NCBI GenBank assembly: GCA_009103225.1
Contig: RHPI01000732.1
Coordinates: forward strand, 170,482-234,481
DNA: 64,000 nt
From: Chlorokybus atmophyticus
Taxonomy: Eukaryota; Plantae; Mesostigma and Chlorokybus algae
Reading direction: 5' to 3'
Below, piece by piece: positions 45,420-63,786 of this stretch. The notes beneath the pieces were generated by a model. That model was not told the DNA's origin. It worked only from the letters and a program-made list of their open reading frames with translations, and did not search any database. The position numbers and the translations under genes were made by a program. Position 1 is the stretch's first letter. Each line of letters starts with the position of its first letter.

Positions 45420-47407
45420 GGAGCAGGTTTAAAGGCACAACAGTAGCTCTCAAGTTGTGAAACAGCTTAAGAAAGGCGCAGCACATGGTGGGAAAGTTAA
45501 GATTGCTTCATTACAGAGCCCACCACGCAGCAGGCAGCGGCAAGAACCAGGACCAGCCAGTAATTGAAGGCCGGATGTGTGTGTTGTTTCGCATTTATAT
45601 ATGGAGATATGCGATAACCCATTGTGATGTAAGGAGATACTGCATTGCGGCAAACCTAACCAGGGGATTCCATCCTCAAGTTGTGTAGAGACAGTGCGGA
45701 GCAAGACGATGCACTGTGGATCACCTTTGTAAGTTGTGGTTGACGCTGAGCAATTAGTTTTCAATTGATGTGCACAGGTCGTGCTGATACCATACAAACA
45801 ACATGTCATCATACATGTGATAAATGCCATGGGCTCTACATGTCGCGTTGCAGCATATTTGCTTGTGAATATGTGAATGGTGATTAACGAATAGCATACC
45901 TCTTGTATGCTTGTGTGTGTGCTTGCGGATTGCGGGCATTACATTGCATGCTATGCATTGGACCTACCGATCATCCTATACCTTGTAAATATTTTAAAAA
46001 AGAATGCGTCAACAATATTGTACAGACTGGGCCAAGTGTTGGCACGGTGTCATTTGATTGTGCACCCCTGGCTTCGTGCACATGCACGTGTTGTCATTCT
46101 CAACAGCAATAGCAAACAATCCAAGTTGAGGGGTCGGAAATAAAACAAAATAAGTGGGTTGTGGTCGGTACATACATTTTCCACCCCCCTCTTGACACGA
46201 GCGTTACTACTGTAACACTTGAACTATCCTTGTGACAGCGCTTACTTAGTTATTTTGTATGCACATGCATAACCCCGCATCCAATTGCTACATCAACTGA
46301 ATGGTCACCTTACAGGGGGAGCTACTTAGCTTCAATCAACCCTTTCTCAAGGCCTTGTTGTGTCTCTTCATGTTCGCAGCTGGACTCGGCCCATACATAG
46401 GCATGAAGACTTGCACAACTCAATCAAGGCATTCCGTGCTACTTATTGTACTCAAGTGGCATACGCATGCAACAGCTCTAAACAAGCTGGCGTACATTGC
46501 CAGAAGACTCATCAAGTGACGAGGTTTGAGTCGCATTGGCAATCCGCTTCATCACACGTAGCATAGATTGGGTTCCTTGTCATACCGCTCTTGTCACCTG
46601 CTTGTTACTCAAACAACATGAGACAGTGATACGAGATGCATCATTACTCGACAATGGGTTCGACATTGTGCCTATCTTCTCGCAGGGTCACACGGCCTCG
46701 CCTATTGCATACATTGCAAAGTTGGAGTATGCACATGTATTGTCACGCCCATAAGGCTGACCAACTTTCAGAATCGTTCTTTGTCCCTTACTTATGACAG
46801 TAAGATGAGACTCAGTGGGGACTCATTCCTTTTCAGCAAGTGTAGTGCCTATGGGGTATGCTCTCACGTAGGTTTGCTCTTGAGCCTATGAGGGCCTTGA
46901 GTAAGGATAAACTACACAAGGCATTGATGATGGCTACATAGCTGATCCATGCATATGGCATGTGAGCCTTTATTATTGTACTGCGAGTTGCCACAGGAAG
47001 TGACAATCAGAAGATTGTGAGCCAAGATTGGCAAAGCACTGTATGTGTACGGTGATCGTGCGATTTGCCATTGATGTGACAGTCGTAAGGCAAGTTGTGC
47101 ATGTGGGCAATCCGCAAGAACATTTGTGTCACACCCCTAACGGTTAGGGGAGCCTAAGATTGTAATTCCAAGGTAGGATTGTTACTCCCATGAGAACTCG
47201 AGGTGGTTCAATACTCTTTACATGGAGTTTACTATTTATTTATAATAGTGATTTATTTATTGGTTCCGATGTTGGAACAAGGTTAGCGCATAATGACAAG
47301 GTCTGTGTGGCGTTGGACATCTTGTGTGCCAGGTCGGGAGCGCAGCATATGGTATAAATACTAAATTGCATCCTAGAGTAGGGATCGTTTCAGTATTGAT
47401 CAAGACA

Positions 47408-47607
<200 letters not shown>

Positions 47608-47881
47608 NTCCCCCTCATCCCTCATGGGGTGCGGTGTTTTGGTGTTGTGCACGTGTGCACGTAGGTATGTTGGGCGTGCGTGTGTGCCTTGGGCTGGAGC
47701 TGAGTAGAGAGGCCGGTAATCATCCACTTCTCCCTTGGTGCTGACCTGCAACTTCCCTTGCAAGGTGTTGCACCGGAGACGCTAGTGGGACTTCCATCTG
47801 TAAATCCGTGGTGCTTGTGCCTACGTTTGCTAACCCGATCAGCAGATAAGCAAGTGGTATCGTTACATGTATACTCAACTT

Positions 47882-48211: not shown

Positions 48212-48987
48212 GAGGGCGTGGGGGCCTGGGGGGGCGGCGACGGCTTTGGCGGCGGCGGGGCGCAGAGGCGGCATTCGGCACTGCTCAGTGCCGCTGCCAG
48301 GCCGGCGGCCTGACAGCGGCGGCAGCGGCGGCAGCTAGCAGCCGCTACCCATTAGGGTGGGTAGTGGTAGTTGTTAGCTAGTTGTTGTTGTTGTTTAATT
48401 GTATAGTTGTATAGTTGCTGTTGTTGGTGTAGCCTAGCCTAGCCTTGCCTTGCCTTGCTTGCTTAGCCTAGTCTAGCTTGCCTGCCCTAGCTGTAAGGGG
48501 GGGTTGTGGTTGTTTACACTTCTCCCACCCCAAGAAAGTAGTCTAATGCCAACTTGGGCTGTTTTGGCCGCCATTCAGTGCGGTAGGGCCGCTAGATTCA
48601 TTTTGGACGGTCGATATCAAACCCTCAACTCACAACTTGTTGATATCGGCCTGCAGGGCTGAGCCAACGAGAGTTTGGCACCTTTTGTGTCATTTACAAT
48701 TGTGAGTTGAGCAGGGTTGTATAAGGTGAAAACTTTAAGTTGTAGCTTGTGAACCGTCGCGTGCATTCGCGTGTCGTTTGTTTACAAGCGAGTGTCTTGT
48801 TGAGAGGTGTTGGGCAGTTATTTTACGTGCTGTTAAACCCAAGTATAGCACTTTAAAATCAGCGAGAAAGAAACAACAAATTTTGACACTTTTAAAGTGC
48901 ACAACTCGTGTGCTTGTGCACTCGTGCACTTGTAAACTTCTTGACGGCTTGTCTCCTTGGGCAGATGTCTCACCAAGGAGAGGAGGG

Positions 48988-50390
48988 ATGTATCCCGTTC
49001 CTGAGGATTTATCCTATGAGCCATCAAGTGATGAGGAAGTGAAGCACTCAGAAACGAGTGGTAGTTACAGTGTCAGTGAAGAGGAAGAAGCCAAGTCCAA
49101 GAGTGGTGAAGCTTCTTCAAAGAAGTCCTCTCCTGATGACCAACCTATGGACGCTCAGAGCATCATCGGCGCGGCCATAGCGAAGTACGCATCAGAGCGT
49201 GAAGCTCTTCTTGCTGCACACCCCCAACTTCGCAAGGAAGTGTGGGATGAGTGGGCGCAGCAAGTGCGTGATGCATATGACACGGACTTTGCGGCAATCC
49301 CGCGCGCAAGCAAGAAGATGGTGATTCGCATGATCGAGCAAAAGTTGACGCGTAATGTACCGCAACTCATGCGCACAAATCCAGCAGTGGCCACTCTCAT
49401 GGCCACTTATGTCAAACCAGGCCCGTATCCAGGCCAGAGGATGGCGTTTGAGGCTTTCACCTTATTGATGGTGGAAACTCAGAAGCGGTGCCTCTTCTGG
49501 TACTTAGGGCCTGAGCTGAAGGAGAAGTTAGCTCGAGAAGAGCGCTTGACTGCACGCCTCGGTGCTATGCAGTCCGAGTTGGTGGCATTACGCCAGCAGG
49601 TGGCAGGGGCTACTACTACTGTAGTAGGGACATCAAATGGCCTTGCCGTCACAACGCTGAACAAGCCCAAGAAGTTTAAGCCCAATGGGGCTGTGAACAT
49701 TCATGATTGGGTGGTGAATGAAAAGCGCTACTTGGCTGCACTTCAGCGACCAGTTAGTGCATACATCTGTTGCTGAGTTGCTCATGCCACCTGACGCTTT
49801 GGCCGAGTGGGCGCGTCAAACAGAGGATGGTGCTTCCAACACTGTGGAGGCATCGTTTCAGTTCTTGGTGGAGCGCTATGGTGGCATGGACCCGGCTACT
49901 GCTGCTCGCAACAAGCTTACCAAGCTGCGACCAAATGGTCGGGCGGCTTCAGTGTACTTGCGCGAGTTTCAGGCACTTGTTGGCCGTGTCAACAGTGGCT
50001 CATGCCCTTGGACAAGGCTGAGCAGTTTGACCAGTACAAGGGCGGCTTGGATGCGCGCTTGCGCGACCAGTGCTGTACAACACGTCGACGGGGCAACCGT
50101 GGGTTCCCGCGGACCTCGCAACCTTGCAGAGGTTGAGTGTGCATCTGTTCAACGACGATGCTGCGGCTGTGCAGGACAAGTCACAGGTGGTGGCTTCAGT
50201 CAAGCCACATGGGGGAGGGGGGAAGCGGTTCCCTCCACAAAGTGCGCATGCGGCGAAAAGGCCAAAACCTCATACGCACCTGCGAGTGGTGCTACGCCTA
50301 TTGCAGCACGCGCCTGTTACGTGTGCCATCAGCCACATTGCGAAGAACTGCCCAACTAAGGGAAAGGGCAAGGCCAAGAAGGTTGAATAG
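48988..50390 (+). pseudogene. gag: gag of the chromovirus (frameshifted, with degenerate CCHC knuckle)
   Basis: ORF from ATG 48988 to 49776, then fragments (FLVERYGGMDPATAARNKLTKL; ACYVCHQPH/IAKNCP). Confidence 0.8.
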
Positions 50391-50789
50391 GATTACGTCG
50401 TGACTCATGTACCTTCATCTAGTGGCTAGTTGCTAGTATTACAGCAAACTGGTTTGATAAATTGTCTCGTGTACATGTAATGACACATGCATGGCAAGCA
50501 CATGATAAGCTGCCACTTTTTGATGGTGAAAAAGTGGATGACCAGGCTTGTGTGCTAGTGCATGTAGAATTTAACATGCTAAGAGAAGTTTTGCGCACAT
50601 TGTGTGAATTATAAAATAAACACACGACACTGAGTGTGGTTGTCATGGTGCCCAAGTATCATGGACCATGGCTAAAGCATACTCGGGGCGGAACTGTGTT
50701 GAAACACTTCACAAAGCGTGAGACGGTAACAGTGCGGTTGTCAGCAATATTGATTAACCCACGCATTAATCACGGAATCTTGGCTACCT

Positions 50790-53700
50790 TTTAAGGGCGA
50801 GTAGTACCTTTATTGTGAACCTTCACAGGCAAGGCACAGAGTGTTACTAGCTCGTTTTTGGTTGACACCGGGGCAACGCATAATTTCGTCGAAGATAAAT
50901 GGGTTATGCGCAATAAGATAGCGTGTAAACCCTCAGCCTTCTCAGCTGCTGGTGCTGGGGGTATGTTATCGGTAAAAGGTGAAATCAAGTTGAAAGTCAA
51001 GATTGGTAAATATTAAGCCGATTTAACTTTCATCGTAGTACCCATTAACATAGTTGGTGTTGATGTGGTATTTGGCCAAGAATGGCAAAATCAAGTGTCT
51101 ATGACATTGGATACTGCTGCACGGCTGTGCACAGTAAAGAAGGGGCGTAAGCGCATCACTTTGTCCGTGCAGGGGTCGCATAGCTTGGAATACAAGCAAA
51201 CGGACCCTGCATTACTTACGGCGCTTCAAGTGAATCGTGCATTACGTAAAAACACACCTGCTTTTCTAATGCACCTGACGTCGAGTGATGATGTAGTGCC
51301 TGGTAATACGGAAGGTGTGGCGGACATTATTGAGAAGTTTTACGACGTATTCTCAGATGAATTGCCGGGCTTGCCCCCTGATCGAGGTGTTGGACCCACA
51401 ATACCTTTAATTTATACAGGTTGAGCCCTAATGAGAGGGGGGAAATGGAAACACTGATAAAAGAGTCATTGAAAAAGGGATTGATTGAACCAAGTTCTTC
51501 ACCCTTTGGCGCAACCATATTGTTTGTTTGTATAAAAAAGAATGGGAAGTTGCGCATGTGTGTGGATTACTGTGCTCTAAACAAGATCACGGTAAATAAC
51601 ATTTACCCGTTGCCAAGGATTGATGATGTGTTTGACGAGTTGTCAGGGAACGCGTACTTTAGTACGCTAGACTTGACAAGCGGCTATCATCAAATCCGGA
51701 TTCATCCTTCGGATGTCTATAAGACAGCATTTATGACACCTACGGGCCATTATCAATACAAAATGTTACCTTTGGAATTGACTAATGCACCCGCTGTGTT
51801 TCAGAAGGAAATTAATTAAAATTTCGGTGATATGCTTGGTCAACATGTCATGACATACTTGGATGACATCATTGTCTTTAGTAGAACAAAGGAAGAACAT
51901 AGGCAACACTTGGAAGCGCTGTTTGCAAGATTGCGCAAGCATCGTTTGTTGGCAAATCTCATCTAGTGTGATTTTTGTAAAACGGAGTTGCCCTTCCTTG
52001 GTCACACTTGTGAGTGGTGCGGGTATCAAACCTGACCCTCGCAAAGTGCAGATTGTGACAGAGAGGCCCCAACCTCAGAGTGTCCATCACCTAAGGTCGT
52101 TTCTGGGGTTGGCAAACTACTACTTTTGCAAGTTCATGATGGGGTACTCGACAGTTGTCATGCCTTTGACCAAACTGTTGCGTAAAGATGCCCTGTTTAC
52201 TTGGACAACAGCACAAGAAGCTGCTATGCAAAAGGTGAAGTTGGCTTTAACAACAGCGCCGGTGTTAGCACTGCCAAATTGGGACAAACACTTCACAGTG
52301 GTCAGTGACGCATCAACACTTGGGTGTGGTGCGGTCTTATTGCAAGATGGTAGACCTTGTCCTTATGAGTAGGAATTTCACTCCTGCAGAGGTGAACTAC
52401 ACTACGACAAAGCAAGAACTATTGGGTATAGTTCATGCTCTTAAGACATGGAGATGTTACTACAGGGTGTTCAGTTCACTGTTGTGATTGATCACAACCC
52501 ATTGGTGTATTTCTCGACACAGCAGAACTTGTCGAGACGGCAAGCGCGCTGGAATGAGTTTTTATCCAGGTTTACCTTCGATTGAGTGTATCGGCCGGGC
52601 AGAACCAATGTGGCTGACCCTTTGAGTCGCTGCCCGTCATTACTGGCGGTGATGCGCGCGCAGTTACTCGCGACACGCAGCACATTGTCTCCCGATGATA
52701 AGTTTGTGCAAACTGTTGTATGGGCGTACACTTTAGAGCCGTGGTTCCAATGCAGACAACTTACAAAAGTTTGACAAACGTGACAATCTGTATTACATGA
52801 GCAACAGTTTGGTGATACCTGATCATGCTGAACTGCGTGTAAAATGCATAGTGGATATACACGATCCACCGTATGCTGGGCACTTTGGTAGTCGCAAGAC
52901 CACTAAGGCAGCGCAACAGTTGTATTGGTGGCCATCGTTGCCTGCTGATGTGAAGCGGTATGTGGACACGTGTGACAAATGTCAACGTGACAAACCGTTA
53001 CGTCAAAAGCTCGCTGGGCTACTGCGGCCGTTACCAGTTCCTGACAGCAAGTGGGAAAGTGTGAGTATGGACCTTATCACTGAGCTGCTTAACACAGCGT
53101 TGGGTCATACTGCGGTTGCAGTGTTTGTGGATCGTTTGATCAAAATGGTTCACATTGTTCCTTACCGTACGGAGATAGGCTCACGTGATCTAACGATGGT
53201 TTTTGTCGCGTCAGTGTTCAAGTTGCATGGCTTGCCTCGCAACATTGTCTCTGGCCGTGACCCGAGGTTTGTGGCTCAGTTTTGGAAGTCGCTATGCAAC
53301 TTCCTGCAGATACAGCAGCACATGAGTACCGCTTATCATCCGCAGACTGATGGTCAAACTGAACGCGCCAATCAAGTGATTGAGGAAACCATTCGGCATT
53401 ATGTGAGTCCGAATCAGTCCGATTGGGAAATTTATCTTCCAATGGCTGAGTTCGCGATTAACAATGCATGGCAAGAGTGTGCAAGAAACTCCGTTTTTCT
53501 TAAATTACGGAGTGCATTCATAAAGTCCTTGGAGTAGTAAATTGCCGGTCTAACGACTTGACTCGCGTGCCTGCAGCGCGCGAGATGGCTGCGGCCATGC
53601 AAGACAGGTTAGCGTTGGCAAAGAGCTGTCTGCGCGCAGCGCATGACAGACACAAAGCCCAGACGGATAAGCATTGTAGGCAGGCCAACTATGATGTGGG

Positions 53701-54129
53701 CAATTCGGTGCTTTTGAGCACCAAAACATATCTATCAAGGGAGTGGGTACCCGAAAGTTTTCCCCTTGCTGGATAGGCCCCTTTAAAGTGGTTGATCGGG
53801 TCGGCACTCACGCGTATCGTTTGGAGTTACCACAATCCATACGTATACATAACGTGTTTCATGCGAGTGTACTGAAACCGTACCGTTCAGACGGTCGGGT
53901 TCAACCTCCTCCACCCTCTGTCGCAGTGGATGGCAATGATACTTTCGAGTATGAGGTGGAAGCAATCCTGAGTCATCGTAAGCCCCAACGCAGACGCGCG
54001 CCGACTTACTTGGTAAAATGGAAAGGGTATGGTGTTGAACACAACACGTGGGAACCTGAAAGGAATCTTACCAACCGTCAAGAGATTCTTCGGGCGTACT
54101 GGAGTGATGTGTCCGCACGCGGACGGTAA
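50790..54129 (+). pseudogene. pol: pol of the chromovirus: protease, RT, RNaseH, integrase, chromodomain (interrupted)
   Basis: ORF fragments 51421-51819, 51863-52372, 52797-53537 and 53743-54129 (YEVEAILSHR...YLVKWKGYGVEHNTWEPERNL). Confidence 0.95.
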
Positions 54130-54613: not shown

Positions 54614-55299
54614 GACTTACGCAGCTTGTGAATCCCCTTGTTCGTCGACATACTGGTTTCATTGAGTAGCGCTACACTTTATGATTGCGGGCTTTAACTT
54701 GAGATCAGATCACGTTTTTAGGGTATGGTATACACGACAGAGGGGTCATATATATATATATGCGTGTGTGTTTGTGTAATAACAATAACAAAGCAAGCAA
54801 GCAAGCATATTATCCATAAAACGAAACAATTAAACCAATTACTTAAAACCACACCACACGTCTACATGTGAATATGTTACCATGTTAAAAACTTGATTGA
54901 GTGAAATTACACCGCATATAAAACAAATGCACATTATTGTAATGGATTACATTACATATGAATAAGCATGATCATGTATCTCATTATAATAATTAAGAAT
55001 CATGCATATAATCGATGCATAGATGGTGCAATACATATTTCACCGATTTGATGCGTGCAACAACGCCCAAAAGCTGTGAGTGTTGACTCAACACTCCCAT
55101 CACTGCTAGGACTCCCCAACTTGGGAGGCTGTGTAAGTTACACAGTGTAACATGTCGTTTATGATCATGGGCTTTTTCAAGTCCCAAACACGTTCCTTCA
55201 ATTATTCCCGACTCACATCTAGCACAAGTCAGGACTAACTGCGATCAAGACACGCATTCCAGACCTCGGTTAGTGGGGTGGAAGGCGCCGTGCAGCAGG

Positions 55300-56588
55300 A
55301 TGGCGGCTGCGGCGGTGGCGGTGGGGTCGGCCAGGAGGGGGCTGTTGAAGTTGTTGCTTCCAAGCAGCAGCAGCGGATCTTGCAGACTGTACGCCGCCGC
55401 CGCCGGTCCCACCGGCAGCTTGACAGACCCAACGGTGACAGGCGGCCTGGCCGGCGGTGACTCCACGTCAGGCCCGCCGCCGGAAGTGGCAGAAGATTCC
55501 GTCAAAGAAAGGAAAGGCTTGCTGGACGCTCACACAGCCAAATGGATGCAGGTGCTTCGCGAATGGCTAGGTGTACAGTGCTGTGACCATCTCTAGTTGT
55601 AATGAGTCATCACCCATATCATCAACAGTATGGTTGCCTCCCTCCACAACTGTATGTTGCTCGTTAACATTGTGATTTTCCTCTCATAGCCTTGCTGTGC
55701 TCTGCTGTGTGCATGCGTGCTGGAGGTCAAGTCAACGTACGTCAGCTCGCAACGTACATGAGCGCTACCAAGTCGCGAGTAACAGCGTATGCAAGTTGTC
55801 GAAACTTACTTCAATCCCAATTGTGTCCCAAACCGTAATTGAAAACCAGACCCCAATCCCAGCATCAGATGTGACGACACTAGCAGACGCATGCAGCTCC
55901 AAGTTGTCCTAGTTTTCGCTTTCCAAGCAGTGTTTTTTTTTGACAAACGCACCATATTATTTATGTTTGAGTCTAATTGTTGAGCAGTAGACCATTGGCG
56001 TTTGATAGCTGATGTGCATGCTGTCATGCTGCTGTTTGCTGGTTATAGTTCCTGGTCATGCTTTTCCAAAACAAGTGTGTGGCCTGTCATCGTATACATG
56101 TTGTTGTGGTGCACAGCTCTTGAAATATGCAATGCATTAGGAACTCAACTTTGTCGTACGCCCTCAGCTGTACGCCAAGTATTCGTCAAGCAACCTGCAG
56201 TTCGTGACCTGTTGTTGCTATGTAAGTGTGCTTAGTAACCGCTGCCACTGCGTCCCTCAGAACACGTCTCTAAAGTCGCCCATGGAGAGGATTTGGGCTG
56301 CGCCTCCCATCAAAGTGCATGGAATGATTGCTGCTTGCGAAGGCGGTAAGGAATGCAACCCCTGCCTGCAGTGACAAGCCGTTGTTGTTGTTGTTGCTGC
56401 TGCTGCTGCTGCTACTGCATATGCACTATATGATCCATACGTAGTAAAGCGTAAAGCGTTTGCTTGCATTGTCAGGTACTGATCCAGCTGTGGGTCATCC
56501 TCTGGAGTTTATTCAGCTTTTGCCAGGCCAAGAAGCCATCTGTAAGTATTGCGGGCTGCGGTATTTCCCCGATACCCATGCACATTAG
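55300..56588 (+). CDS. NDUFS6: Mitochondrial complex I 13-kDa zinc-finger subunit (3 exons: 55300-55551, 56270-~56345, 56476-56588)
   Basis: Mitochondrial-type presequence then DAHTAKWMQNTSLKSPMERIWAAPPIKVHGMIAACEGGTDPAVGHPLEFIQLLPGQEAICKYCGLRY, matching plant NDUFS6 (HTAKWMQD..KKSPMELI.EVPPIKV.GRIVACEG...GHP.EFI...CKYCGLRY). Confidence 0.96.
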
Positions 56589-57192: not shown

Positions 57193-59682
57193 TCACGGCA
57201 ACACGTTGGGCGCCTGCCACGCTGTAGCACAATACCTCCAATCCGCTTCAATCTCCAATGCATACTCATCCGCAACGCGCCAAACAGTCTCAGCAAACTC
57301 GTCTTCATGGCCTGCCCACACAATACATCAGCTTCAACGATGCACAGACATGATGAGGCAAGTTTGGCTGCAAGGCTCGCAATTGAAGTAGTGAACACCC
57401 AAGTTGTTACATAAGATCATGTTGCAATCGCAACTACTTTGCCCGTATAACAATCACTTCACCAGCGGTCAAGTTGAGAAACTCGTTGCGGAATGTGCCA
57501 AGCCCCATTTTTGGTTCGGTGTCGCGCTGGGCGTACAGTTGCGTGGAAGCGAGTATGGTGCACATCTGTTCCGAAAGCTGGATGAACTCCTTGGCGTCTT
57601 CCAGCAGGAAACGCCTCTCATCCTTCTTGATGTCATCGGCAAGCAGCGGGTAGGACGCTTTGAAGGGGGAACGCTCTCTGACCGAGTAGTAACCGTCGGG
57701 AAGGCTGAAGTAACCAAGGAAGCGATCCGGTTCTGGAACTAGCGCCTGATACACCGCAGCATGCCGCTCACCGTCATTCTTGAAAGTGTTCAGGAGCTCA
57801 ACACGCTTCTTTGTGGAAAGGTAGCCGAAGCCAACCGGAGGCGATTGTCGTTTGGCATCCAGGATGCGGGTTGCATTTTCAACGCCTTCAAGCAATATAT
57901 AGTACCTACAGGTTGACACAACCATTGCAGCACCATTGCTTGAGTTGTGCCGAAACAAGTTGTATACATACAACATGCGTACACGCAAGGACACACGGCT
58001 CTAGCTTGTGTTGGTTGTACCTGGGTGTGCCAAGGCTGCCAGTGCCAGCAAGCCAGCGCTTGGCAACATCAAGGACATGCCATGACTGTGATGGGTCGAA
58101 TGCCAGCGTGCGGTTGGCAAGTGTTGTTCTGTACGCAAACATGCTTGCTTCAATCATCATACGCTCAGTAGTGTCGCGAGCCAGCGGAGAGAGCTTTCCC
58201 TTGATGTGCCTGAATCTGATAAGAAAAGACATCTGAGTAACAATGATGTGCAAACAAGGACATGTGACTCCAACTCAATCCAGTCATGCACCAATCTACC
58301 TGCGCCTGCCCTTGGTGTCTAATTCCGTCCACTTATCCAACATGGCCTGCCTTGTTGAAGTAATTGCCACATACTCTGTCCACAACGATAACGGTCCCTT
58401 CATGTTGGCAGCCGTGAACACTGCATCCTCAGGGCCTCTGTACCTTCTCACCTGAGCAAGCCGCAAGCACAGTTAATAGTGCATTGCTTTGCAGTATACA
58501 ACTGATACTGAATCTAGTATGTGCATTAACTTGAGATTGTGCTCACCGCTTCTGCATATGACAAAGCGCAGGCACGTATGGCCGTCTTGTGTGCAGCAGC
58601 GCCAAGGGCAGTGGCATTTGTAGCATCGTTGTGACGGGCGATTAGCACGAGAGATGCTACAAGCCGCCACAAGTCGTACTGGTAGTCGCCTACCATGCCC
58701 TCATCAAAGTCATTAGGGATGAACACAATCCTGCCCGACGCATCTGCAGCAACCTGTCAAACGGCATGTCAAGACCAGGAAGGTGCTTTGCATACATGTG
58801 TGATCAACATCCATGCGGCAGACACACATGCAAGCATTTGTGTTTGTGCGGTTGCGCGGGCATGTGCATGACACACATGCATGCACATACCCCAAAGTTG
58901 TAGGCATGTGCATCGCCAGTGAGCCATGTCTTTGTTTCGGGGCTGCCGAAACGATCCAACCGCCAGTCACCACTGCAAATTAACCCAAATCAAACAAGCT
59001 GACCCGCACAGATGTGCACAGGCTATGGTCTGGCCAGTGGCAGTAGAAATATATCAGGCAGCGCACCTGAAATCTCCCCAGTAAAGGTGACATGTCCCTG
59101 CAGATCAACGGTCGTTAGCCTTCTGAACATACATGCTGTGCATAACTCTTGTTGACATGAAATTTGCACGTGCAAACACAGTGGATATGGCGCGAACCAG
59201 GTTGGATGGACGATTGCACAAACCTCTGAATAAAGCAAATGCGGTTGGAGCCATGGCTTCAAATTTCTTAATCCGGATGCCAGGTTTGAGCTGACTGTTC
59301 CATCTGTAAACTTCTGCCAAAACCTGCAGAAGTTTAAGATCAGCTGCGAGTAAGACTGCAACTCTTTACACATTTCACGACAGTAGCATATGTGGATCAA
59401 TACGACACACAGCCATAACACTAGCTTCTACACCTACTCAGATGACAACACGCACATGTTTACTTTTTCCGCTCTTCTGTTGTCAGCTGTCTTCAGTGGG
59501 TTTCCGTCAGCTGAGTAGTCGCTTATGAAGGAAGGGAACTTCTCGGCATTCTGCGCCGCATACAGGCACGACCACGACACCTCATGCTTCTTGTGATGGT
59601 GCGCAAGAAGTGACAATGATGATGCAGCTGAGATGGCAACAAATGTCGCCAGCGATGAGACAGCACACAATCCCAGTAGCAT
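57193..59682 (-). CDS. DUF2252 family (protein-kinase-like fold) protein with N-terminal signal peptide/anchor, multi-exon
   Basis: Exons give KFEAMAPTAFALFRGTCHLYWGDF, TKTWLTGDAHAYNFG (58891-58917), IVFIPNDFDEG...DLWRLVASL (58700-58714), DVAKRWLAGTGSLGTPRYYILLEG, RILDAKRQ, YSVRERSPFK, FAETVWRVADEYALEIEADW; N-terminus MLLGLCAVSSLATFVAISAASSLSLLA. Confidence 0.88.
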
Positions 59683-60297
59683 GAGCAGCCTTGGTGTCCG
59701 CCCGCGCCTGTACCCACAATCACCAAGTGTTGGGATATGGCAATGCATGACTCATGCCGTGTAAGCTTTAGCGCAGACTATCGGCAGTTTCTGGCGGCTT
59801 GCCTGACCAAACACGACAGCATCACGAATGAACGAACACATCAAAGCACTGCAAACAGGCTGGTGCGGGCAAGAACCATGGGTACAGTGACACTGAGCAA
59901 AGAGCGTGTCTGCATTTACAATGACGTTAGTTAGCACCCAGTACTGCTTTTACGTGAGCACGTAGCGTCTTGCCTAGCATGAGCACAGCAACTTTACTGT
60001 CGAATGCAAGAACGTAGCGTTTGTGTGCAGTGGCCTGCTGTTGCATTGCATCCAGGTGAGCTTACACCTGACCTTGCTGGCTTCTCTAGAAACGGGTCAT
60101 CCAGCAGCGGTGTCGTCAGCGACTCCATCCTTCTATTTCTCTCAGACAAACTTCAGGCTTACCAAATTGCAGTCACGGGCAATGCTGCTGCCTGCTCAAC
60201 ACACAGTGCCCCACTGCATGTCTATGCGCGCCGACAGCCAGTCAGGTGTCAAGCTGAGGTCGGCAATGCCTGCGACCAGAGCAACCCTACGAGCTTC

Positions 60298-60877
60298 ATG
60301 GCTGCCGCCGCCGCCGCCGCCGCCACCATCGCCACGTGGCAGAACAACCGACGCTTCAGTACTGAGATCAAATCCTCATTACGGTCAGTCCTCATTGCAC
60401 CTCTTGTAGTTCTACCTCACACAGGACCCAGTGTGAACAACTGGCTCATCTACCTGATCATCAGGTCCTGATGAAGTCAAGCATGAACACTGCGGCAAAA
60501 TTGACTTCAAGCTCTTGGGTCCCAAATGGAGCCAGGTGCAACGAATTTTATCTTGTATTGGGACCCTTTTGCTGATGTGGCGAACGCTCATCATTGAAGT
60601 GTGCAAACGGCTTTTTATAGCGTGCTGTTCCCGCGCAAAAAGGGCGGGAAGCTGCAGCAGGCGTTTTATATAAGGCTGCTTGGGCCCGCTGCTCGCAGGC
60701 AGCAGCCTGGCTGAGCAGCTTGAGCTTAGCAGCGCTGTGGACGGCCGCAGCAAGGTGTGGAGAGGCTTGGCAGTTGTTGGCGTGGTGAGCTGTTGCATTG
60801 CTCAAGCTGGTTGTGAAGCTTACGGACAAGCGCAAGCTCAAGCGCAGGCGCAGGTGCAAGGGCAAGCCAAAAGTTGA
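60298..60877 (+). CDS. Candidate small spliced gene between DUF2252 and the lactamase-like gene; unresolved
   Basis: ATG GCT (GCC)n start typical of this genome (MAAAAAAAATIATWQNNRRFSTEIKSSLR), strong donor gtcagt at about 60385, possible downstream exons 60425-60534 and ~60703-60877; the first intron would be unusually short (about 40 nt). Confidence 0.25.
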
Positions 60878-61473
60878 GCTCCAGCGCTAGCTATCTGCCT
60901 TGCCTGGTCAAGCGTCAGCTTAGCCAACAGGCGGAAAGGAGGCTGTGGCAGGGGCAAGCAGCATACGAGAAGCTGCTTGTTGTCTAGTTGCAAGCTGTTT
61001 CGAGCTGCGCAAGCTCGCTGGCTACCGTGCATTGTCGTTGAGCGGTGCTGCTTGACGTCGGATCCAGCTCAGGCGACAGCCATCGGCGATGACGAGCTGT
61101 GAGTTTGCGTGGTGACTGCATTGAAGGTGAGAAATTAGTCTGGATCAAGGTTCCTGGACTAGTGCCTTTAGTGGATCGCAGCAGTTTGGGCATGCTAGTA
61201 TTGTTAAGACTTAACTTGCAAGGTCGGCATGAGCCTGTTGGTTGCATAGGCCCTCGTGTCCAGCTGCCAATGCTTAACGTTAACTGACAATGCGCCAGTT
61301 TGATCATGAAAATGGTACTCTTTCTGCTATGACAGTAGTGGCTTCTGACATGACAGGTTTGCAGGTCTTATTGCTCGCCTTGGTCCGCACATTCGTTGAA
61401 AGCAAGGAAGAGGAGTCTTATCCTACCTGAGAGGAAGGCTGCATTTCGACCTTAGCTTGGTTGTGTTGACATT

Positions 61474-63786
61474 ATGGCGAGCAAGAGGCGGCACATCACA
61501 CGCGACCCCATTGCCAGCATTTGTGCAGCGATCAACTCTACCGTCTTTGACTTACCAGCACTCAGCCAGGCGGTGTCTCAGGCGTCTCACACCAGCTCAA
61601 TTGCGAGGCCAAGAGAGCCTCTTGGCGACCCCATTCTGCGCTTGCACAGAGCTGTCAAGGCCTTTGCTTCACATGTGAAGCTTCCACCCATTGCATTACT
61701 TGCTGCCCCGCGGACTCATGCTCCAGTGGTAGTCTCAGTGCAACAGTATGAAGTTCGAGCCGGTATTGCAACAGCTCCTGTGAGGCCACCACCACATGTA
61801 GCAAAGCCAGCTAAGGCGCCTACTGCTGTCGCTCCTCCTCCCCCTCAGCCAGTGAGAACCGGGCCGGAGCCAGTGCCATCCAAGCCCGAGACATCGTCGT
61901 GTGGCACATCAGACCCTTGGAAGGCATTCTGCTGGCTGCCACCTAAGCATCTGCTTCCACCCGTGCGAGTGCGCAAGCTTCGGCGAGCGCTGTGGCAGCT
62001 GGCAAAGAAGCATAGCGGGTCAGTGCTAAGTGGTTGGCCGGTGATGGGTGTGCAATGCATTGGATTGCCTGGCTATGAAGCTGAATTGCATGTGTGGTAG
62101 TGTGTGGGATGGATCACGTGCAATGTCTGCATTCAGGGTAAACTCATCAACTGTTTGCCAATCAGACACATGCGCGTTGGAGCTTGCATTATACATCTTT
62201 CTTCTGGAGAGCAGAGCAGTGTTGATGGGAAACGCCGCTATCCTCTTGCTAGCGTTGTAAAGACAGCACTGCTCGTAGAAGCTGCCAGGCAGCTGCAGCA
62301 GTCACAGGTAATGCATGCGCGCCAATTCACATCTGTTGGAAGCAGTTCGTGCAATCATGAATGTTGCCAACCGACATGTATGCAGGCACGTGGATGGGGG
62401 TTGTCATTGCGGACACCCATCACCATCACAGAGGATATCAAGTGCATTGGAGCAGGTACGTCGCATGCACAGTAATGTAGTATTTGCTGCTGCCAAGCGT
62501 GCATAAGCTTGCATGCACTGTTTTTGACAAGGCAAGCCTTGGCTTGCAGGCAAATTGCAGAAGGCACGGCATGGCACTCCTATCACACTGGGCGAGTGCA
62601 TAGAGTTGATGATTACGGTATCAGACAACACTGCCTCAGACCTTGTGCTGCGAGAAGTGCGCCTGCACAAAGTGCGACAGATGTGCAGAGACCTTGGCCT
62701 GCACATGACAGACATCTACTTGTCCCAGCGTCAGGTATTGACAAAACAGTTGCATTGTTACAGAACTCATGCATGCTTGCATGTCAAGCTGTAAGCTGCT
62801 TCTTTGTTCATGTTTTTGTGTGCATGCAGGCATATCTGGTAGCGCTTGGACGAGCCCCTGGGGCCAAGGGGCGCGGCTTCCTTGCGCGATGGCTGGGTAT
62901 GTCTACAGGAGAGCGAATTGAGTTGGCAGAGGCTGCTGAGCGTGAGAACGCCGGGGTGCGCTTGAACGCTTTTCAGAACATGGAGAAGAACTCCTTCAAA
63001 GTCCAGAAGGTAGACACAGAAATGCGGAATGCAGGCATCTGTGATGCGCTTCCTATCTGCATGCATGATGTGAGCCTTAAACCTTCCATTGTTGCAGACC
63101 AGAAGTGCCACAGCACATCAGCATGACTTGGATTTGGTTGCTGCCATTGACAACCATGCATCTCCATACGATACGGCTCGCCTGCTGGAGCTTCTTGGAC
63201 AAAACAGGGTGCGTGGCCTCAACGGCGAGTGGAGCGAGTACTGCCTCGCTGTTCTTGGTCGCCAGAGGTAAGAGTGTGTTTGTGCTCACATAATGTGTGC
63301 CTATCAAAACCAAGCGTTATAGATATGGTTGTGCATGTTGGAGTCAGCCCTTGCCAACCGGGCAGTTGTGCAACAGGTATGGCAAGAGGAGGTTCTTGGC
63401 ACTGCTGCCAGCTGGTACTCCTATATACCACAAGACCGGCAGCATTTCTGGTGTGGTGAACGACGCAGGCATTATTGACATTGGATCGAAGGCGAATCGC
63501 GTGGCTGTGGCTGCCCTCATAAGCAATGTTCAGCATGTAAGCAGTTTCCTGAAGTTGTGCTTTGCATGTGCTTTACATTTGCACAGCAACAAACAACACG
63601 TATGATAATGCTGGGTAAACTTTTGCTGCGTTTACTGCTTTGACTGTCTAACATGGAGCTGCCCCTTTGTAGGGACGCGAAGCTGAGGCGGAGCAAGTCA
63701 TCGCAAGAATTGCCCGACTGGCATGGGAGGCTTACGCCCCGAGCCACCTGCGCGATGCACCCGCAGCATTTCCCATTGCAGCTTGA
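61474..63786 (+). CDS. Class A beta-lactamase-fold / PBP-A-like serine hydrolase (Beta-lactamase2 family) with long Pro/Ala/Ser-rich N-terminal extension, multi-exon
   Basis: RVGACIIHLSSGE...DGKRRYPLASVVK (SxxK at 62251-62262), MITVSDNTASD (SDN at 62621-62629), DNHASPYDTARLL, LPAGTPIYHKTGS..GVVNDAGII (KTG at 63432-63440), terminal helix EAEQVIARIARLAWEAY; stop TGA 63784-63786. Confidence 0.92.

What the first reader, a model, noticed from the sequence alone, without database searches (positions are those of the whole stretch)
57193..63786. Divergent pair of bacterial-type resistance-enzyme folds: DUF2252 kinase-like gene and class A beta-lactamase-like gene
Seen: two adjacent intron-rich genes transcribed away from each other with about 1.8 kb between start codons, both with intact catalytic motifs and N-terminal targeting-like extensions. 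Established: DUF2252 belongs to the protein-kinase-like clan that includes aminoglycoside and choline kinases, and class A lactamase-fold proteins are penicillin-recognising serine hydrolases; both families are mainly bacterial. Inference: a co-regulated, horizontally acquired and intron-domesticated islet acting on bacterial-type small molecules or peptidoglycan fragments, either for detoxification in soil communities or for plastid wall turnover.
Basis: partly seen in the sequence, partly recalled or inferred. Interest (0 to 1): 0.75.

Follow-up and report, generated by a model that had tools for sequence, protein, structure and literature searches.

The report
Two adjacent bacterial-type algal genes, unrelated origins
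Two real, intron-containing genes of the alga Chlorokybus atmophyticus, a kinase-like DUF2252 gene and a penicillin-binding-type lactamase-fold gene, sit head to head, but they entered the lineage separately, so this is a chance neighbourhood and not a co-acquired gene island.

Summary
The window is Chlorokybus atmophyticus nuclear DNA. It carries a 9-exon DUF2252 gene (minus strand, 59748-57193, 537 aa, JGI Chlat1 8845). It also carries an 8-exon class-A-lactamase-fold gene (plus strand, 61474-63786, 521 aa, Chlat1 8846). Their start codons are 1,725 bp apart, all introns are GT-AG, and both proteins have N-terminal extensions.

The "co-acquired islet" reading is not supported.
- DUF2252 has orthologues in Klebsormidium, Mesotaenium and Spirogloea. 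Together they form a clade that mirrors the species tree (support 96/91), so the gene predates the streptophyte radiation.
- The lactamase-fold gene is the only eukaryotic member found of a bacterial subfamily seen in Eremiobacterota, Armatimonadota and related MAGs. Best identity is 45%, on a long branch. This suggests a separate, lineage-specific transfer.
- None of 160 bacterial or metagenomic loci carrying lactamase-fold relatives has a DUF2252 gene within 10 kb.

The lactamase-fold protein keeps SxxK, SDN and KTG. It has Ala where class A enzymes have Glu166, and a 60-70-residue helical Omega-loop insert with an invariant Glu. Its closest solved structures are PBP-A and LRA-5. It is therefore more likely a DD-peptidase-like penicillin-binding hydrolase than a beta-lactamase.

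DUF2252 keeps every family-invariant residue of a lobe-permuted kinase-like fold; its substrate is unknown. Co-regulation and cellular targeting remain untested. Other first readers of this scan had already noted the lactamase gene on this same stretch.

The parts
57193..59748 (-). DUF2252 gene (JGI Chlat1 8845, Chrsp91S08155; 537 aa). Nine exons: 59748-59464, 59323-59224, 59097-59067, 58972-58891, 58753-58547, 58451-58300, 58215-58021, 57905-57463, 57311-57193.
   Evidence: PF10009 scores 196 bits, E 1.4e-57, for the public protein P0001. tblastn of P0001 onto the window reproduces the exons. All introns are GT-AG and the CDS is 1614 nt.
59464..59748 (-). Exon 1 of DUF2252. It encodes the N-terminal extension of about 80 aa, which has no bacterial counterpart. 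An Arg-rich stretch is followed by a hydrophobic segment at residues 21-39, resembling a signal peptide or signal anchor.
   Evidence: Kyte-Doolittle 19-mer maximum of 2.4 at residue 21. pLDDT is below 50 for residues 1-79. The Pfam match starts at residue 115.
58897..58914 (-). Catalytic-loop-like motif of DUF2252, D159-x-H161-x-x-N164 (G-D-A-H-A-Y-N-F-G).
   Evidence: D159, H161 and N164 are at least 90% conserved in 100 family members. There is a weak APH-profile match over residues 151-202.
58703..58711 (-). Metal-binding D181-F-D183 motif (N-D-F-D-E) of DUF2252.
   Evidence: These columns are invariant in alignment A3.
57851..58046 (-). N-lobe-like part of DUF2252: the glycine-rich G343-T-G-S-L-G348 motif (58046-58029) and the invariant K369 (57853-57851). 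It lies after the catalytic motifs in the chain, which indicates a permuted lobe order.
   Evidence: Invariant columns in A3. Model residues 301-431 align to the N-lobes of APH-type small-molecule kinases, Z 5-6. [quoted passage not shown]
59749..61473 (.). Head-to-head spacer of 1,725 bp between the two start codons, a candidate shared promoter region.
   Evidence: None of the five ORFs tested has a Pfam match above its cut-off. The two genes carry consecutive JGI ids (8845, 8846) and consecutive EukProt ids (P008715, P008716). Transcription was not testable.
61474..63786 (+). Class-A-lactamase-fold / PBP-A-like gene (JGI Chlat1 8846, Chrsp91S08184; 521 aa). Eight exons: 61474-62018, 62166-62307, 62386-62455, 62550-62734, 62830-63009, 63098-63267, 63377-63536, 63673-63786.
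   Evidence: PF13354 scores 131 bits, E 4e-38, for the public protein P0348. tblastn maps the exons. All introns are GT-AG and the CDS is 1566 nt. The exons are colinear with bacterial homologues.
61474..61940 (+). N-terminal extension of the lactamase-fold protein, about 155 aa. The start is Ser/Thr/Ala-rich and basic, followed by a Pro-rich linker. It stands where bacterial homologues have a signal peptide.
   Evidence: pLDDT is mostly below 60 up to about residue 155. BLASTP alignments to bacterial homologues start at residues 134-185.
62251..62262 (+). S211-V-V-K214: the SxxK motif with the acylation nucleophile.
   Evidence: Invariant in 97 family members.
62621..62629 (+). S277-D-N279: the SDN motif.
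   Evidence: Invariant.
62830..63130 (+). Expanded Omega-loop region: exon 5 plus the start of exon 6, residues 315-about 392. It forms five predicted helices. Ala315 occupies the Glu166-equivalent position. Invariant E366 is at 62983-62985 and S369 is also invariant.
   Evidence: Residues 314-392 are unaligned to LRA-5 and PBP-A, where 9 residues stand instead. E366 and S369 are invariant and Q363 is at least 90% conserved. Helices have pLDDT mostly above 90.
63432..63440 (+). K450-T-G452: the KTG motif.
   Evidence: Invariant.

Best explanation
These are two ordinary, expressed-looking nuclear genes of Chlorokybus atmophyticus. They lie head to head, but they have separate evolutionary histories and probably separate functions.

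(1) The DUF2252 gene encodes a protein-kinase-like enzyme whose lobes are in permuted order. It keeps the catalytic Asp/Asn loop, the D-F-D metal site, a glycine-rich loop and the invariant Lys. It most likely transfers phosphate from ATP to a still unknown, probably small-molecule, substrate. It belongs to a streptophyte-algal orthologue group (Chlorokybus, Klebsormidium, Mesotaenium, Spirogloea). That group descends from one ancient acquisition, presumably from bacteria, made before these lineages split.

(2) The lactamase-fold gene belongs to an uncharacterised bacterial subfamily of PBP-A/LRA-5-like class-A-fold serine hydrolases. The subfamily carries a 60-70-residue helical expansion of the Omega loop. 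The protein should be acylated at Ser211 by D-Ala-D-Ala-type peptides or by beta-lactams. Because it lacks the canonical Glu166, it is expected to act as a DD-peptidase or penicillin-binding hydrolase and not as an efficient beta-lactamase. It looks like a separate, Chlorokybus-lineage transfer from soil-type bacteria, followed by intron gain and replacement of the signal peptide by a new N-terminus.

Shown here: the gene models, family membership, motif retention, the trees, and the absence of linkage in bacteria. Inferred: enzymatic activities, direction of transfer, and cellular location. Adjacency is best explained by chance or by secondary rearrangement. A shared bidirectional promoter is possible but untested.
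For: - Organism and gene identity.
- Exon models.
- DUF2252 orthologues: Mesotaenium ME000296S05103 and Klebsormidium KFL_000690070, Spirogloea SM000031S11520.
- Careful IQ-TREE (LG+C20) gives (Chlorokybus,(Klebsormidium,(Mesotaenium,Spirogloea))) with support 96/91, 100/98 and 98/86. FastTree on 124 rows agrees.
- Lactamase-fold gene: every listed hit other than the query's own record is unnamed or carries a bacterial name (one an archaeal MAG), and none has a EukProt source. The best is 45% identical. The protein is a long branch inside an all-prokaryotic tree.
- Nearest solved relatives are LRA-5 and PBP-A by sequence (E about 1e-16). By fold they are 4ewf, LRA-5 and PBP-A (TM 0.84-0.90).
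- The NCBIfam class A equivalog scores 99.9 bits against a cut-off of 200.
- PBP-A is a DD-carboxy/endopeptidase, and class A enzymes differ from it by the catalytic Omega-loop Glu (PMC11189452).
- No DUF2252 gene in 160 loci, 2.14 Mb.
- Kinase-like evidence for DUF2252.
Against: - Both Chlorokybus proteins sit on long branches (1.5 and 1.2 changes per site), so their placements carry some risk of attraction artefacts.
- Absence of other eukaryotic lactamase-fold orthologues rests on one word-seeded search that lists only the best 120 hits. It cannot see unsampled algae, such as other Chlorokybus species.
- The 160 bacterial loci are a sample, and many belong to neighbouring subfamilies.
- An invariant Glu366 in the insert could restore a deacylation base, so true beta-lactamase activity is not excluded.
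- Two bacterial-type enzyme genes sharing a 1.7-kb spacer is still a coincidence that co-regulation could make meaningful.
Confidence: 0.72

Rival explanations
1. The two genes arrived together as one bacterial fragment, were intronised, and now act as a co-regulated module on bacterial small molecules or peptidoglycan fragments.
For: Both families are mainly bacterial. The genes are head to head with only 1,725 bp between start codons, and no supported gene lies between them. Their composition and intron sizes are similar.
Against: DUF2252 is shared with three other streptophyte algae in a species-tree-like clade, whereas the lactamase-fold gene is not seen in them. The nearest bacterial relatives of the two genes differ in kind: cyanobacteria and proteobacteria for one, Eremiobacterota and Armatimonadota-type MAGs for the other. 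No DUF2252 gene is found in 160 bacterial loci. The N-termini are of different types.
Confidence: 0.05
2. The genes have independent origins but are now functionally coupled. The shared spacer is a bidirectional promoter, and the two enzymes work in one process. One example is handling of muropeptides or amino sugars, with a kinase-like enzyme phosphorylating a sugar released after peptide trimming.
For: The head-to-head spacing is short and holds no supported gene. The best structural match of the DUF2252 N-lobe is N-acetylhexosamine 1-kinase, though weak at Z 5.9. Streptophyte algae encode the full peptidoglycan synthesis set (PMC7455551).
Against: There are no expression data. The structural match is weak and covers one lobe only. 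The other streptophytes that have DUF2252 show no partner lactamase-fold gene. The N-terminal signals differ.
Confidence: 0.13
3. The lactamase-fold protein is imported into the plastid and remodels the plastid peptidoglycan layer, as a recruited non-cyanobacterial DD-peptidase.
For: It is PBP-A-like in fold and motifs. PBP-A is a DD-peptidase (PMC11189452). The bacterial signal peptide is replaced by a Ser/Thr/Ala-rich, basic N-terminus with no hydrophobic signal. Peptidoglycan genes are present in all streptophyte algae (PMC7455551).
Against: The gene is not of cyanobacterial type and is not shared with other peptidoglycan-bearing streptophytes, so it is not part of the conserved machinery. 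No targeting predictor was available. Bacterial gene neighbourhoods give no peptidoglycan link.
Confidence: 0.2
4. The lactamase-fold gene is ancient in green algae and was lost everywhere else sampled; it is not a recent transfer.
For: The branch is very long (1.2 changes per site) and no close bacterial donor is seen (best 45% identity). The gene is fully ameliorated and has seven introns.
Against: This requires many independent losses. No other eukaryote appears among the listed hits.
Confidence: 0.15
5. Bacterial contamination or misassembly.
For: Both protein families are bacterial.
Against: There are fifteen GT-AG introns of 78-151 nt. GC is similar to the rest of the window. The flanks are eukaryotic: an LTR retrotransposon and a zf-CHCC gene upstream.
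Confidence: 0.01

Closest known systems
PBP-A of Thermosynechococcus elongatus (Tll2115; PDB 2j7v, 2j8y, 2j9o)
   Same: Class-A-lactamase fold (TM 0.88-0.90 on the target). SxxK, SDN and KTG are present. There is no Glu at the Omega-loop position. Sequence match E about 1e-16. PBP-A is a DD-carboxy/endopeptidase (PMC11189452).
   Different: Only about 21% identity. The Chlorokybus protein and its bacterial subfamily carry a 60-70-residue helical insert in place of the short Omega loop, with an invariant Glu366. Its relatives are not cyanobacterial. It is a eukaryotic nuclear gene with introns and a long N-terminal extension.
LRA-5, a class A beta-lactamase 'precursor' from an Alaskan soil metagenome (PDB 8eo5-8eo7)
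   Same: Best sequence match among solved structures (E 5e-17). Like LRA-5, it lacks Glu166; the entry titles name a V166E mutant.
   Different: 23-24% identity. LRA-5 has a normal-length Omega loop.
True class A beta-lactamases (TEM, CTX-M, PER, TLA and others)
   Same: The fold and the three acylation motifs.
   Different: Glu166 is absent at the canonical site. The NCBIfam equivalog score of 99.9 bits is far below the cut-off of 200.
Pfam DUF2252 (PF10009; COG4320), an uncharacterised lobe-permuted member of the protein-kinase-like clan
   Same: Full-length match of 196 bits. All invariant residues are kept.
   Different: It is eukaryotic and intron-containing, with an N-terminal hydrophobic extension. 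It is about 40% identical to the nearest bacterial members.
APH-type small-molecule kinases (NahK 4ocj, homoserine kinase II 2ppq, fructosamine-3-kinase 3jr1, macrolide and aminoglycoside phosphotransferases)
   Same: The N-lobe fold of these enzymes aligns to model residues 301-431 (Z 4-6). There is a weak APH profile match over the catalytic loop.
   Different: Lobe order is reversed. There is no whole-domain match (Foldseek found nothing at E<=0.001). The substrate is unknown.

Membership tests
Pfam DUF2252 (PF10009) | Profile score above the gathering cut-off over most of the model | tested here: met
   196 bits against a cut-off of 22.3; profile positions 9-387 of 392.
Pfam DUF2252 (PF10009) | Family-invariant residues (D-F-D, G-x-G-S-x-G, K, S-x-R and others) | tested here: met
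   All 23 invariant columns of a 100-sequence alignment are present in P0001.
Protein-kinase-like fold with permuted lobes | N-lobe-like domain placed after the catalytic-loop motifs in the chain | tested here: inconclusive
   VIA-align matches residues 301-431 to kinase N-lobes at Z 5-6 only. Foldseek gave no significant hit. The permutation is stated in PMC9758233 and a 2026 preprint.
Protein-kinase-like fold with permuted lobes | ATP-dependent phosphotransfer activity | not testable with these tools
   No member is reported as characterised in the five papers that mention DUF2252.
Class A beta-lactamase (true, hydrolysing) | SxxK, SDN and KTG motifs | tested here: met
   S211/K214, S277-D-N279 and K450-T-G452.
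Class A beta-lactamase (true, hydrolysing) | Glu166 general base in a short Omega loop | tested here: not met
   R313 aligns to R164 of LRA-5, and two residues later stands Ala315. Seventy-nine residues replace the 9-residue stretch.
Class A beta-lactamase (true, hydrolysing) | NCBIfam bla_class_A equivalog cut-off | tested here: not met
   99.9 bits against a cut-off of 200.
PBP-A-like penicillin-binding DD-peptidases | Class A fold without the Omega-loop glutamate | tested here: met
   PMC11189452 for the family trait.
PBP-A-like penicillin-binding DD-peptidases | DD-carboxypeptidase/endopeptidase activity on muropeptides | not testable with these tools
   Needs an enzyme assay.
PBP-A-like penicillin-binding DD-peptidases | Close sequence kinship with the cyanobacterial family | tested here: not met
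   About 21% identity to PBP-A. The nearest relatives are Eremiobacterota, Armatimonadota and unnamed MAG proteins.
Co-transferred gene islet (operon-derived HGT pair) | The same pair is linked in candidate donor bacteria | tested here: not met
   tblastn with seven DUF2252 proteins found nothing in 160 loci, 2.14 Mb.
Co-transferred gene islet (operon-derived HGT pair) | Both genes have the same taxonomic distribution and history | tested here: not met
   DUF2252 is in four streptophyte algae. The lactamase-fold gene was found in Chlorokybus only.

The most novel reading that the evidence does not exclude
The two neighbours have become a lineage-specific module for handling bacterial-type wall fragments. 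The PBP-A-like enzyme, with an Omega-insert glutamate as a new catalytic base, trims D-Ala-containing peptides in or around the plastid. The lobe-permuted DUF2252 kinase phosphorylates a released amino sugar, and both are driven from one bidirectional promoter. This would give DUF2252 its first function. It would also show a non-cyanobacterial enzyme recruited to an organelle wall.
Probability: 0.05. Interest if true: 0.75.

Novelty: new member of a known kind. Interest (0 to 1): 0.33.

Why it matters
The result turns an attractive 'resistance islet' story into two separate, more modest facts.

First, DUF2252, an uncharacterised and almost purely bacterial kinase-like family, has a vertically inherited orthologue group across streptophyte algae. 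That gives a eukaryotic handle on an unknown enzyme.

Second, Chlorokybus carries what appears to be the only eukaryotic member of an uncharacterised PBP-A-like subfamily with an enlarged Omega region and an invariant glutamate in it. This subfamily is relevant to how penicillin-binding peptidases and class A beta-lactamases interconvert.

Neither fact changes current views of algal gene transfer, which is already known to have contributed bacterial enzymes to streptophytes.

Tried and rejected
- A 124-row mixture-model tree did not finish in two runs. It was replaced by FastTree on all rows and by quick and careful IQ-TREE runs on 38 rows.
- Foldseek with the DUF2252 model gave no hit at E<=0.001. 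A sequence search of the PDB gave nothing either.
- NCBIfam has no model for DUF2252.
- My first exon-2 acceptor for the lactamase gene (near 62137) and the long version of exon 7 (from 63323) were rejected. The phase is wrong for the first, and both the bacterial homologues and the public model support 62166 and 63377.
This does not disprove a gene.
- Bacterial neighbours of lactamase-fold relatives vary: an LRR protein and a histidine kinase in one locus, a Bmp-type ABC transporter in another. They give no functional lead.
- The ESM Atlas only confirmed the two Pfam families in bacterial or archaeal clusters.
- No tRNA or Rfam match occurs in the window.
Exons were searched singly by reference, and all full-length work used the public records P0001 and P0348 that those searches returned.

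Full report
**What is there**

The window is nuclear DNA of the streptophyte alga Chlorokybus atmophyticus. A search with one exon of the minus-strand gene (window 57464-57904) against 1.84 billion representative proteins returned a 537-aa protein that is 100% identical over that exon. Its source name is jgi/Chlat1/8845/Chrsp91S08155, EukProt Chlorokybus_atmophyticus_P008715. A profile made of two bacterial homologues plus the plus-strand exons entered as separate rows (alignment A1) returned jgi/Chlat1/8846/Chrsp91S08184, 521 aa, EukProt P008716.

Exons were searched one by one by reference, that joined step was left out, and all full-length analyses use these two public records (P0001, P0348).

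**Gene models**

tblastn of P0001 and P0348 onto the window and a splice-site check give the following.
- DUF2252 is on the minus strand with 9 exons (59748-57193, CDS 1614 nt).
- The lactamase-fold gene is on the plus strand with 8 exons (61474-63786, CDS 1566 nt).
- All 15 introns are GT-AG and 78-151 nt long, with GC 0.46.
- Exon GC3 is 0.58 and 0.56, and window GC is 0.51.
- The start codons are 1,725 bp apart.

Exon-wise Pfam hits and full-length scores confirm the families: PF10009 at 196 bits and PF13354 at 131 bits. Upstream of the DUF2252 3' end lie ORFs that read as a Ty3/gypsy-type retrotransposon. A zf-CHCC exon also lies there (PF10276, E 8.5e-11). With the introns, this rules out bacterial contamination.

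**DUF2252**

The nearest relatives are only about 40% identical. Most are bacterial or metagenomic, but three are streptophyte algae:
- Spirogloea muscicola SM000031S11520
- Mesotaenium endlicherianum ME000296S05103
- Klebsormidium nitens KFL_000690070

FastTree on 124 rows puts Chlorokybus with Spirogloea and Mesotaenium (support 97). A careful IQ-TREE run (LG+C20, 38 rows) gives (Chlorokybus,(Klebsormidium,(Mesotaenium,Spirogloea))) with ultrafast bootstrap/SH-aLRT of 96/91, 100/98 and 98/86. The quick run agrees. This is the species branching order, so the simplest reading is one acquisition before the streptophyte radiation followed by vertical descent. The Chlorokybus branch is long (1.5), which leaves some risk. 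The bacterial sister group is not resolved (84/87 for a Xenococcus/Electrothrix pair).

In a 100-sequence alignment, all 23 invariant columns are kept in the Chlorokybus protein. These include D181-F-D183, G343-x-G-S-x-G348, K369 and S425-x-R427, together with the near-invariant D159-x-H161-x-x-N164. The AlphaFold model is confident from residue ~90 (mean pLDDT 85). Foldseek finds no PDB match at E<=0.001. VIA-align matches residues 301-431 to the N-lobes of APH-type small-molecule kinases at Z 4-6. Examples are N-acetylhexosamine 1-kinase, homoserine kinase II, fructosamine-3-kinase and macrolide or aminoglycoside phosphotransferases. This places the N-lobe after the catalytic motifs. That order agrees with the published remark that DUF2252 has flipped N and C lobes within the Pfam kinase clan (PMC9758233; bioRxiv 10.64898/2026.09.18.752743). 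None of the five papers that mention the family reports a function. The first ~80 residues have no bacterial counterpart and contain an Arg-rich stretch followed by a hydrophobic 19-mer (KD 2.4). The Klebsormidium orthologue instead has a long Ser/Thr-rich, acid-free N-terminus, and Spirogloea has none, so targeting is not conserved.

**Lactamase-fold gene**

A scan of 185,579 prokaryotic genomes with exon 4 gave 80 loci. Only a few match several exons, notably a rumen bacterium (L002) and a Candidatus Xenobia MAG (L039). Their ORFs are colinear with all window exons, including exon 5.

A search with the L002 protein, and then with the profile, found several hundred relatives. Named ones are Eremiobacterota/Vulcanimicrobiota, Armatimonadota, Xenobia, UBP9, Candidatus Bruticola and one archaeal MAG. 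Apart from P0348, no listed hit has a EukProt source or a eukaryote name. The best identity to P0348 is 45%, to an unnamed metagenomic protein. In the tree P0348 is a long branch (1.2) without a resolved sister inside this prokaryotic family.

Among solved structures the closest by sequence are LRA-5 (8eo5/8eo7) and PBP-A (2j7v/2j9o) at E about 1e-16. By fold they are 4ewf, LRA-5 and PBP-A, with TM 0.84-0.90 on the target.

In a 97-sequence alignment the invariant residues are S211, K214, S277-D-N279 and K450-T-G452. Also invariant are R313, E366, S369, N393, R436 and H449. R313 aligns to R164 of LRA-5, and N393 aligns to the residue that follows the Omega loop. Between them the alga has 79 residues where LRA-5 has 9. 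The residue two positions after R313 is Ala315, so the canonical Glu166 is missing, as it is in PBP-A and LRA-5.

The insert is modelled as five helices at high confidence. It carries Q363, E366 and S369 at i, i+3, i+6, which is one face of a helix. I infer that this face is functional. Whether E366 reaches the active site could not be measured, because the model coordinates are not exposed.

The NCBIfam class A equivalog scores 99.9 bits against a cut-off of 200. PBP-A is a DD-carboxy/endopeptidase, and class A enzymes differ from it by the catalytic Omega-loop glutamate (PMC11189452). I therefore read the algal protein as a penicillin-binding, DD-peptidase-like hydrolase and not as a resistance-type lactamase.

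Bacterial relatives start with signal peptides. The algal protein instead has a ~155-aa extension without a hydrophobic signal. This extension is Ser/Thr/Ala-rich, basic and then Pro-rich. It is compatible with an organelle transit peptide but not diagnostic of one.

**Is it an islet?**

Three tests speak against co-acquisition.
- The two genes have different distributions: four streptophytes versus Chlorokybus alone.
- Their bacterial relatives are of different kinds.
- No DUF2252 gene lies within 10 kb of any of 80 genomic and 80 metagenomic lactamase-fold loci. In total 2.14 Mb was searched by tblastn with seven DUF2252 proteins.

Bacterial neighbourhoods of the lactamase-fold genes are heterogeneous. 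The spacer holds no ORF with family support, and the two genes have consecutive ids in two annotations. A shared promoter therefore remains possible, but expression data were not available. Since no lactamase-fold orthologue was detected in those algae, the pair cannot be conserved there unless the search missed it.

**Plastid-wall idea**

All streptophyte algae are reported to encode the ten core peptidoglycan enzymes (PMC7455551), so a substrate may exist. However, this gene is neither cyanobacterial in type nor shared with other wall-bearing streptophytes. I give the idea about 0.2.

**Verdict**

- Both genes are already in public annotations.
- The new points are the streptophyte-wide DUF2252 orthologue group and the apparently unique eukaryotic member of an Omega-expanded PBP-A-like subfamily.
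- Interest is modest.

Noticed in passing
window 48778-54129 (+): A run of long ORFs reads as a Ty3/gypsy-type LTR retrotransposon: gag-like, reverse transcriptase, integrase and a C-terminal chromodomain-like ORF. It was identified from motifs in the translations only, with no profile search.
   Followed up: no
window 47257-47763: A long (CA/TG)n microsatellite contains an unknown base (X in the translation). It may be an assembly gap.
   Followed up: no
window 56460-56585 (+), perhaps with 55273-55596: An exon encodes a zf-CHCC zinc-finger domain (PF10276, E 8.5e-11). This domain is known from NDUFS6-type mitochondrial proteins. It is an ordinary eukaryotic neighbour gene.
   Followed up: partly
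window 60298-60877 (+) and 60826-60860: The spacer contains a GCC repeat that would encode poly-Ala, and a CAAGCG/CAGGCG repeat that would encode an Ala-Gln run.
   Followed up: partly
protein P0173 (Trichoplax adhaerens TRIADDRAFT_56771): The Trichoplax DUF2252 protein groups with the gammaproteobacterium Endothiovibrio (95/91) and not with the algal clade. This suggests a separate transfer or symbiont-derived sequence.
   Followed up: partly
protein P0375 (Klebsormidium nitens KFL_000690070, 688 aa): The Klebsormidium DUF2252 orthologue has a long Ser/Thr-rich, acid-free N-terminus (15 S+T and 0 D+E in the first 60 aa). Chlorokybus has a hydrophobic anchor and Spirogloea has no extension. 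Location may differ between lineages, or some gene models may be wrong.
   Followed up: partly
protein P0121 (Moorena producens DUF2252): Some bacterial DUF2252 proteins start with a lipoprotein-like signal (hydrophobic stretch followed by Cys). Part of the family may work outside the cytoplasm, which would be odd for an ATP-dependent kinase.
   Followed up: no
locus L133 5783-7794: A GC-rich (71%) metagenomic contig carries two tandem lactamase-fold genes of this family.
   Followed up: partly
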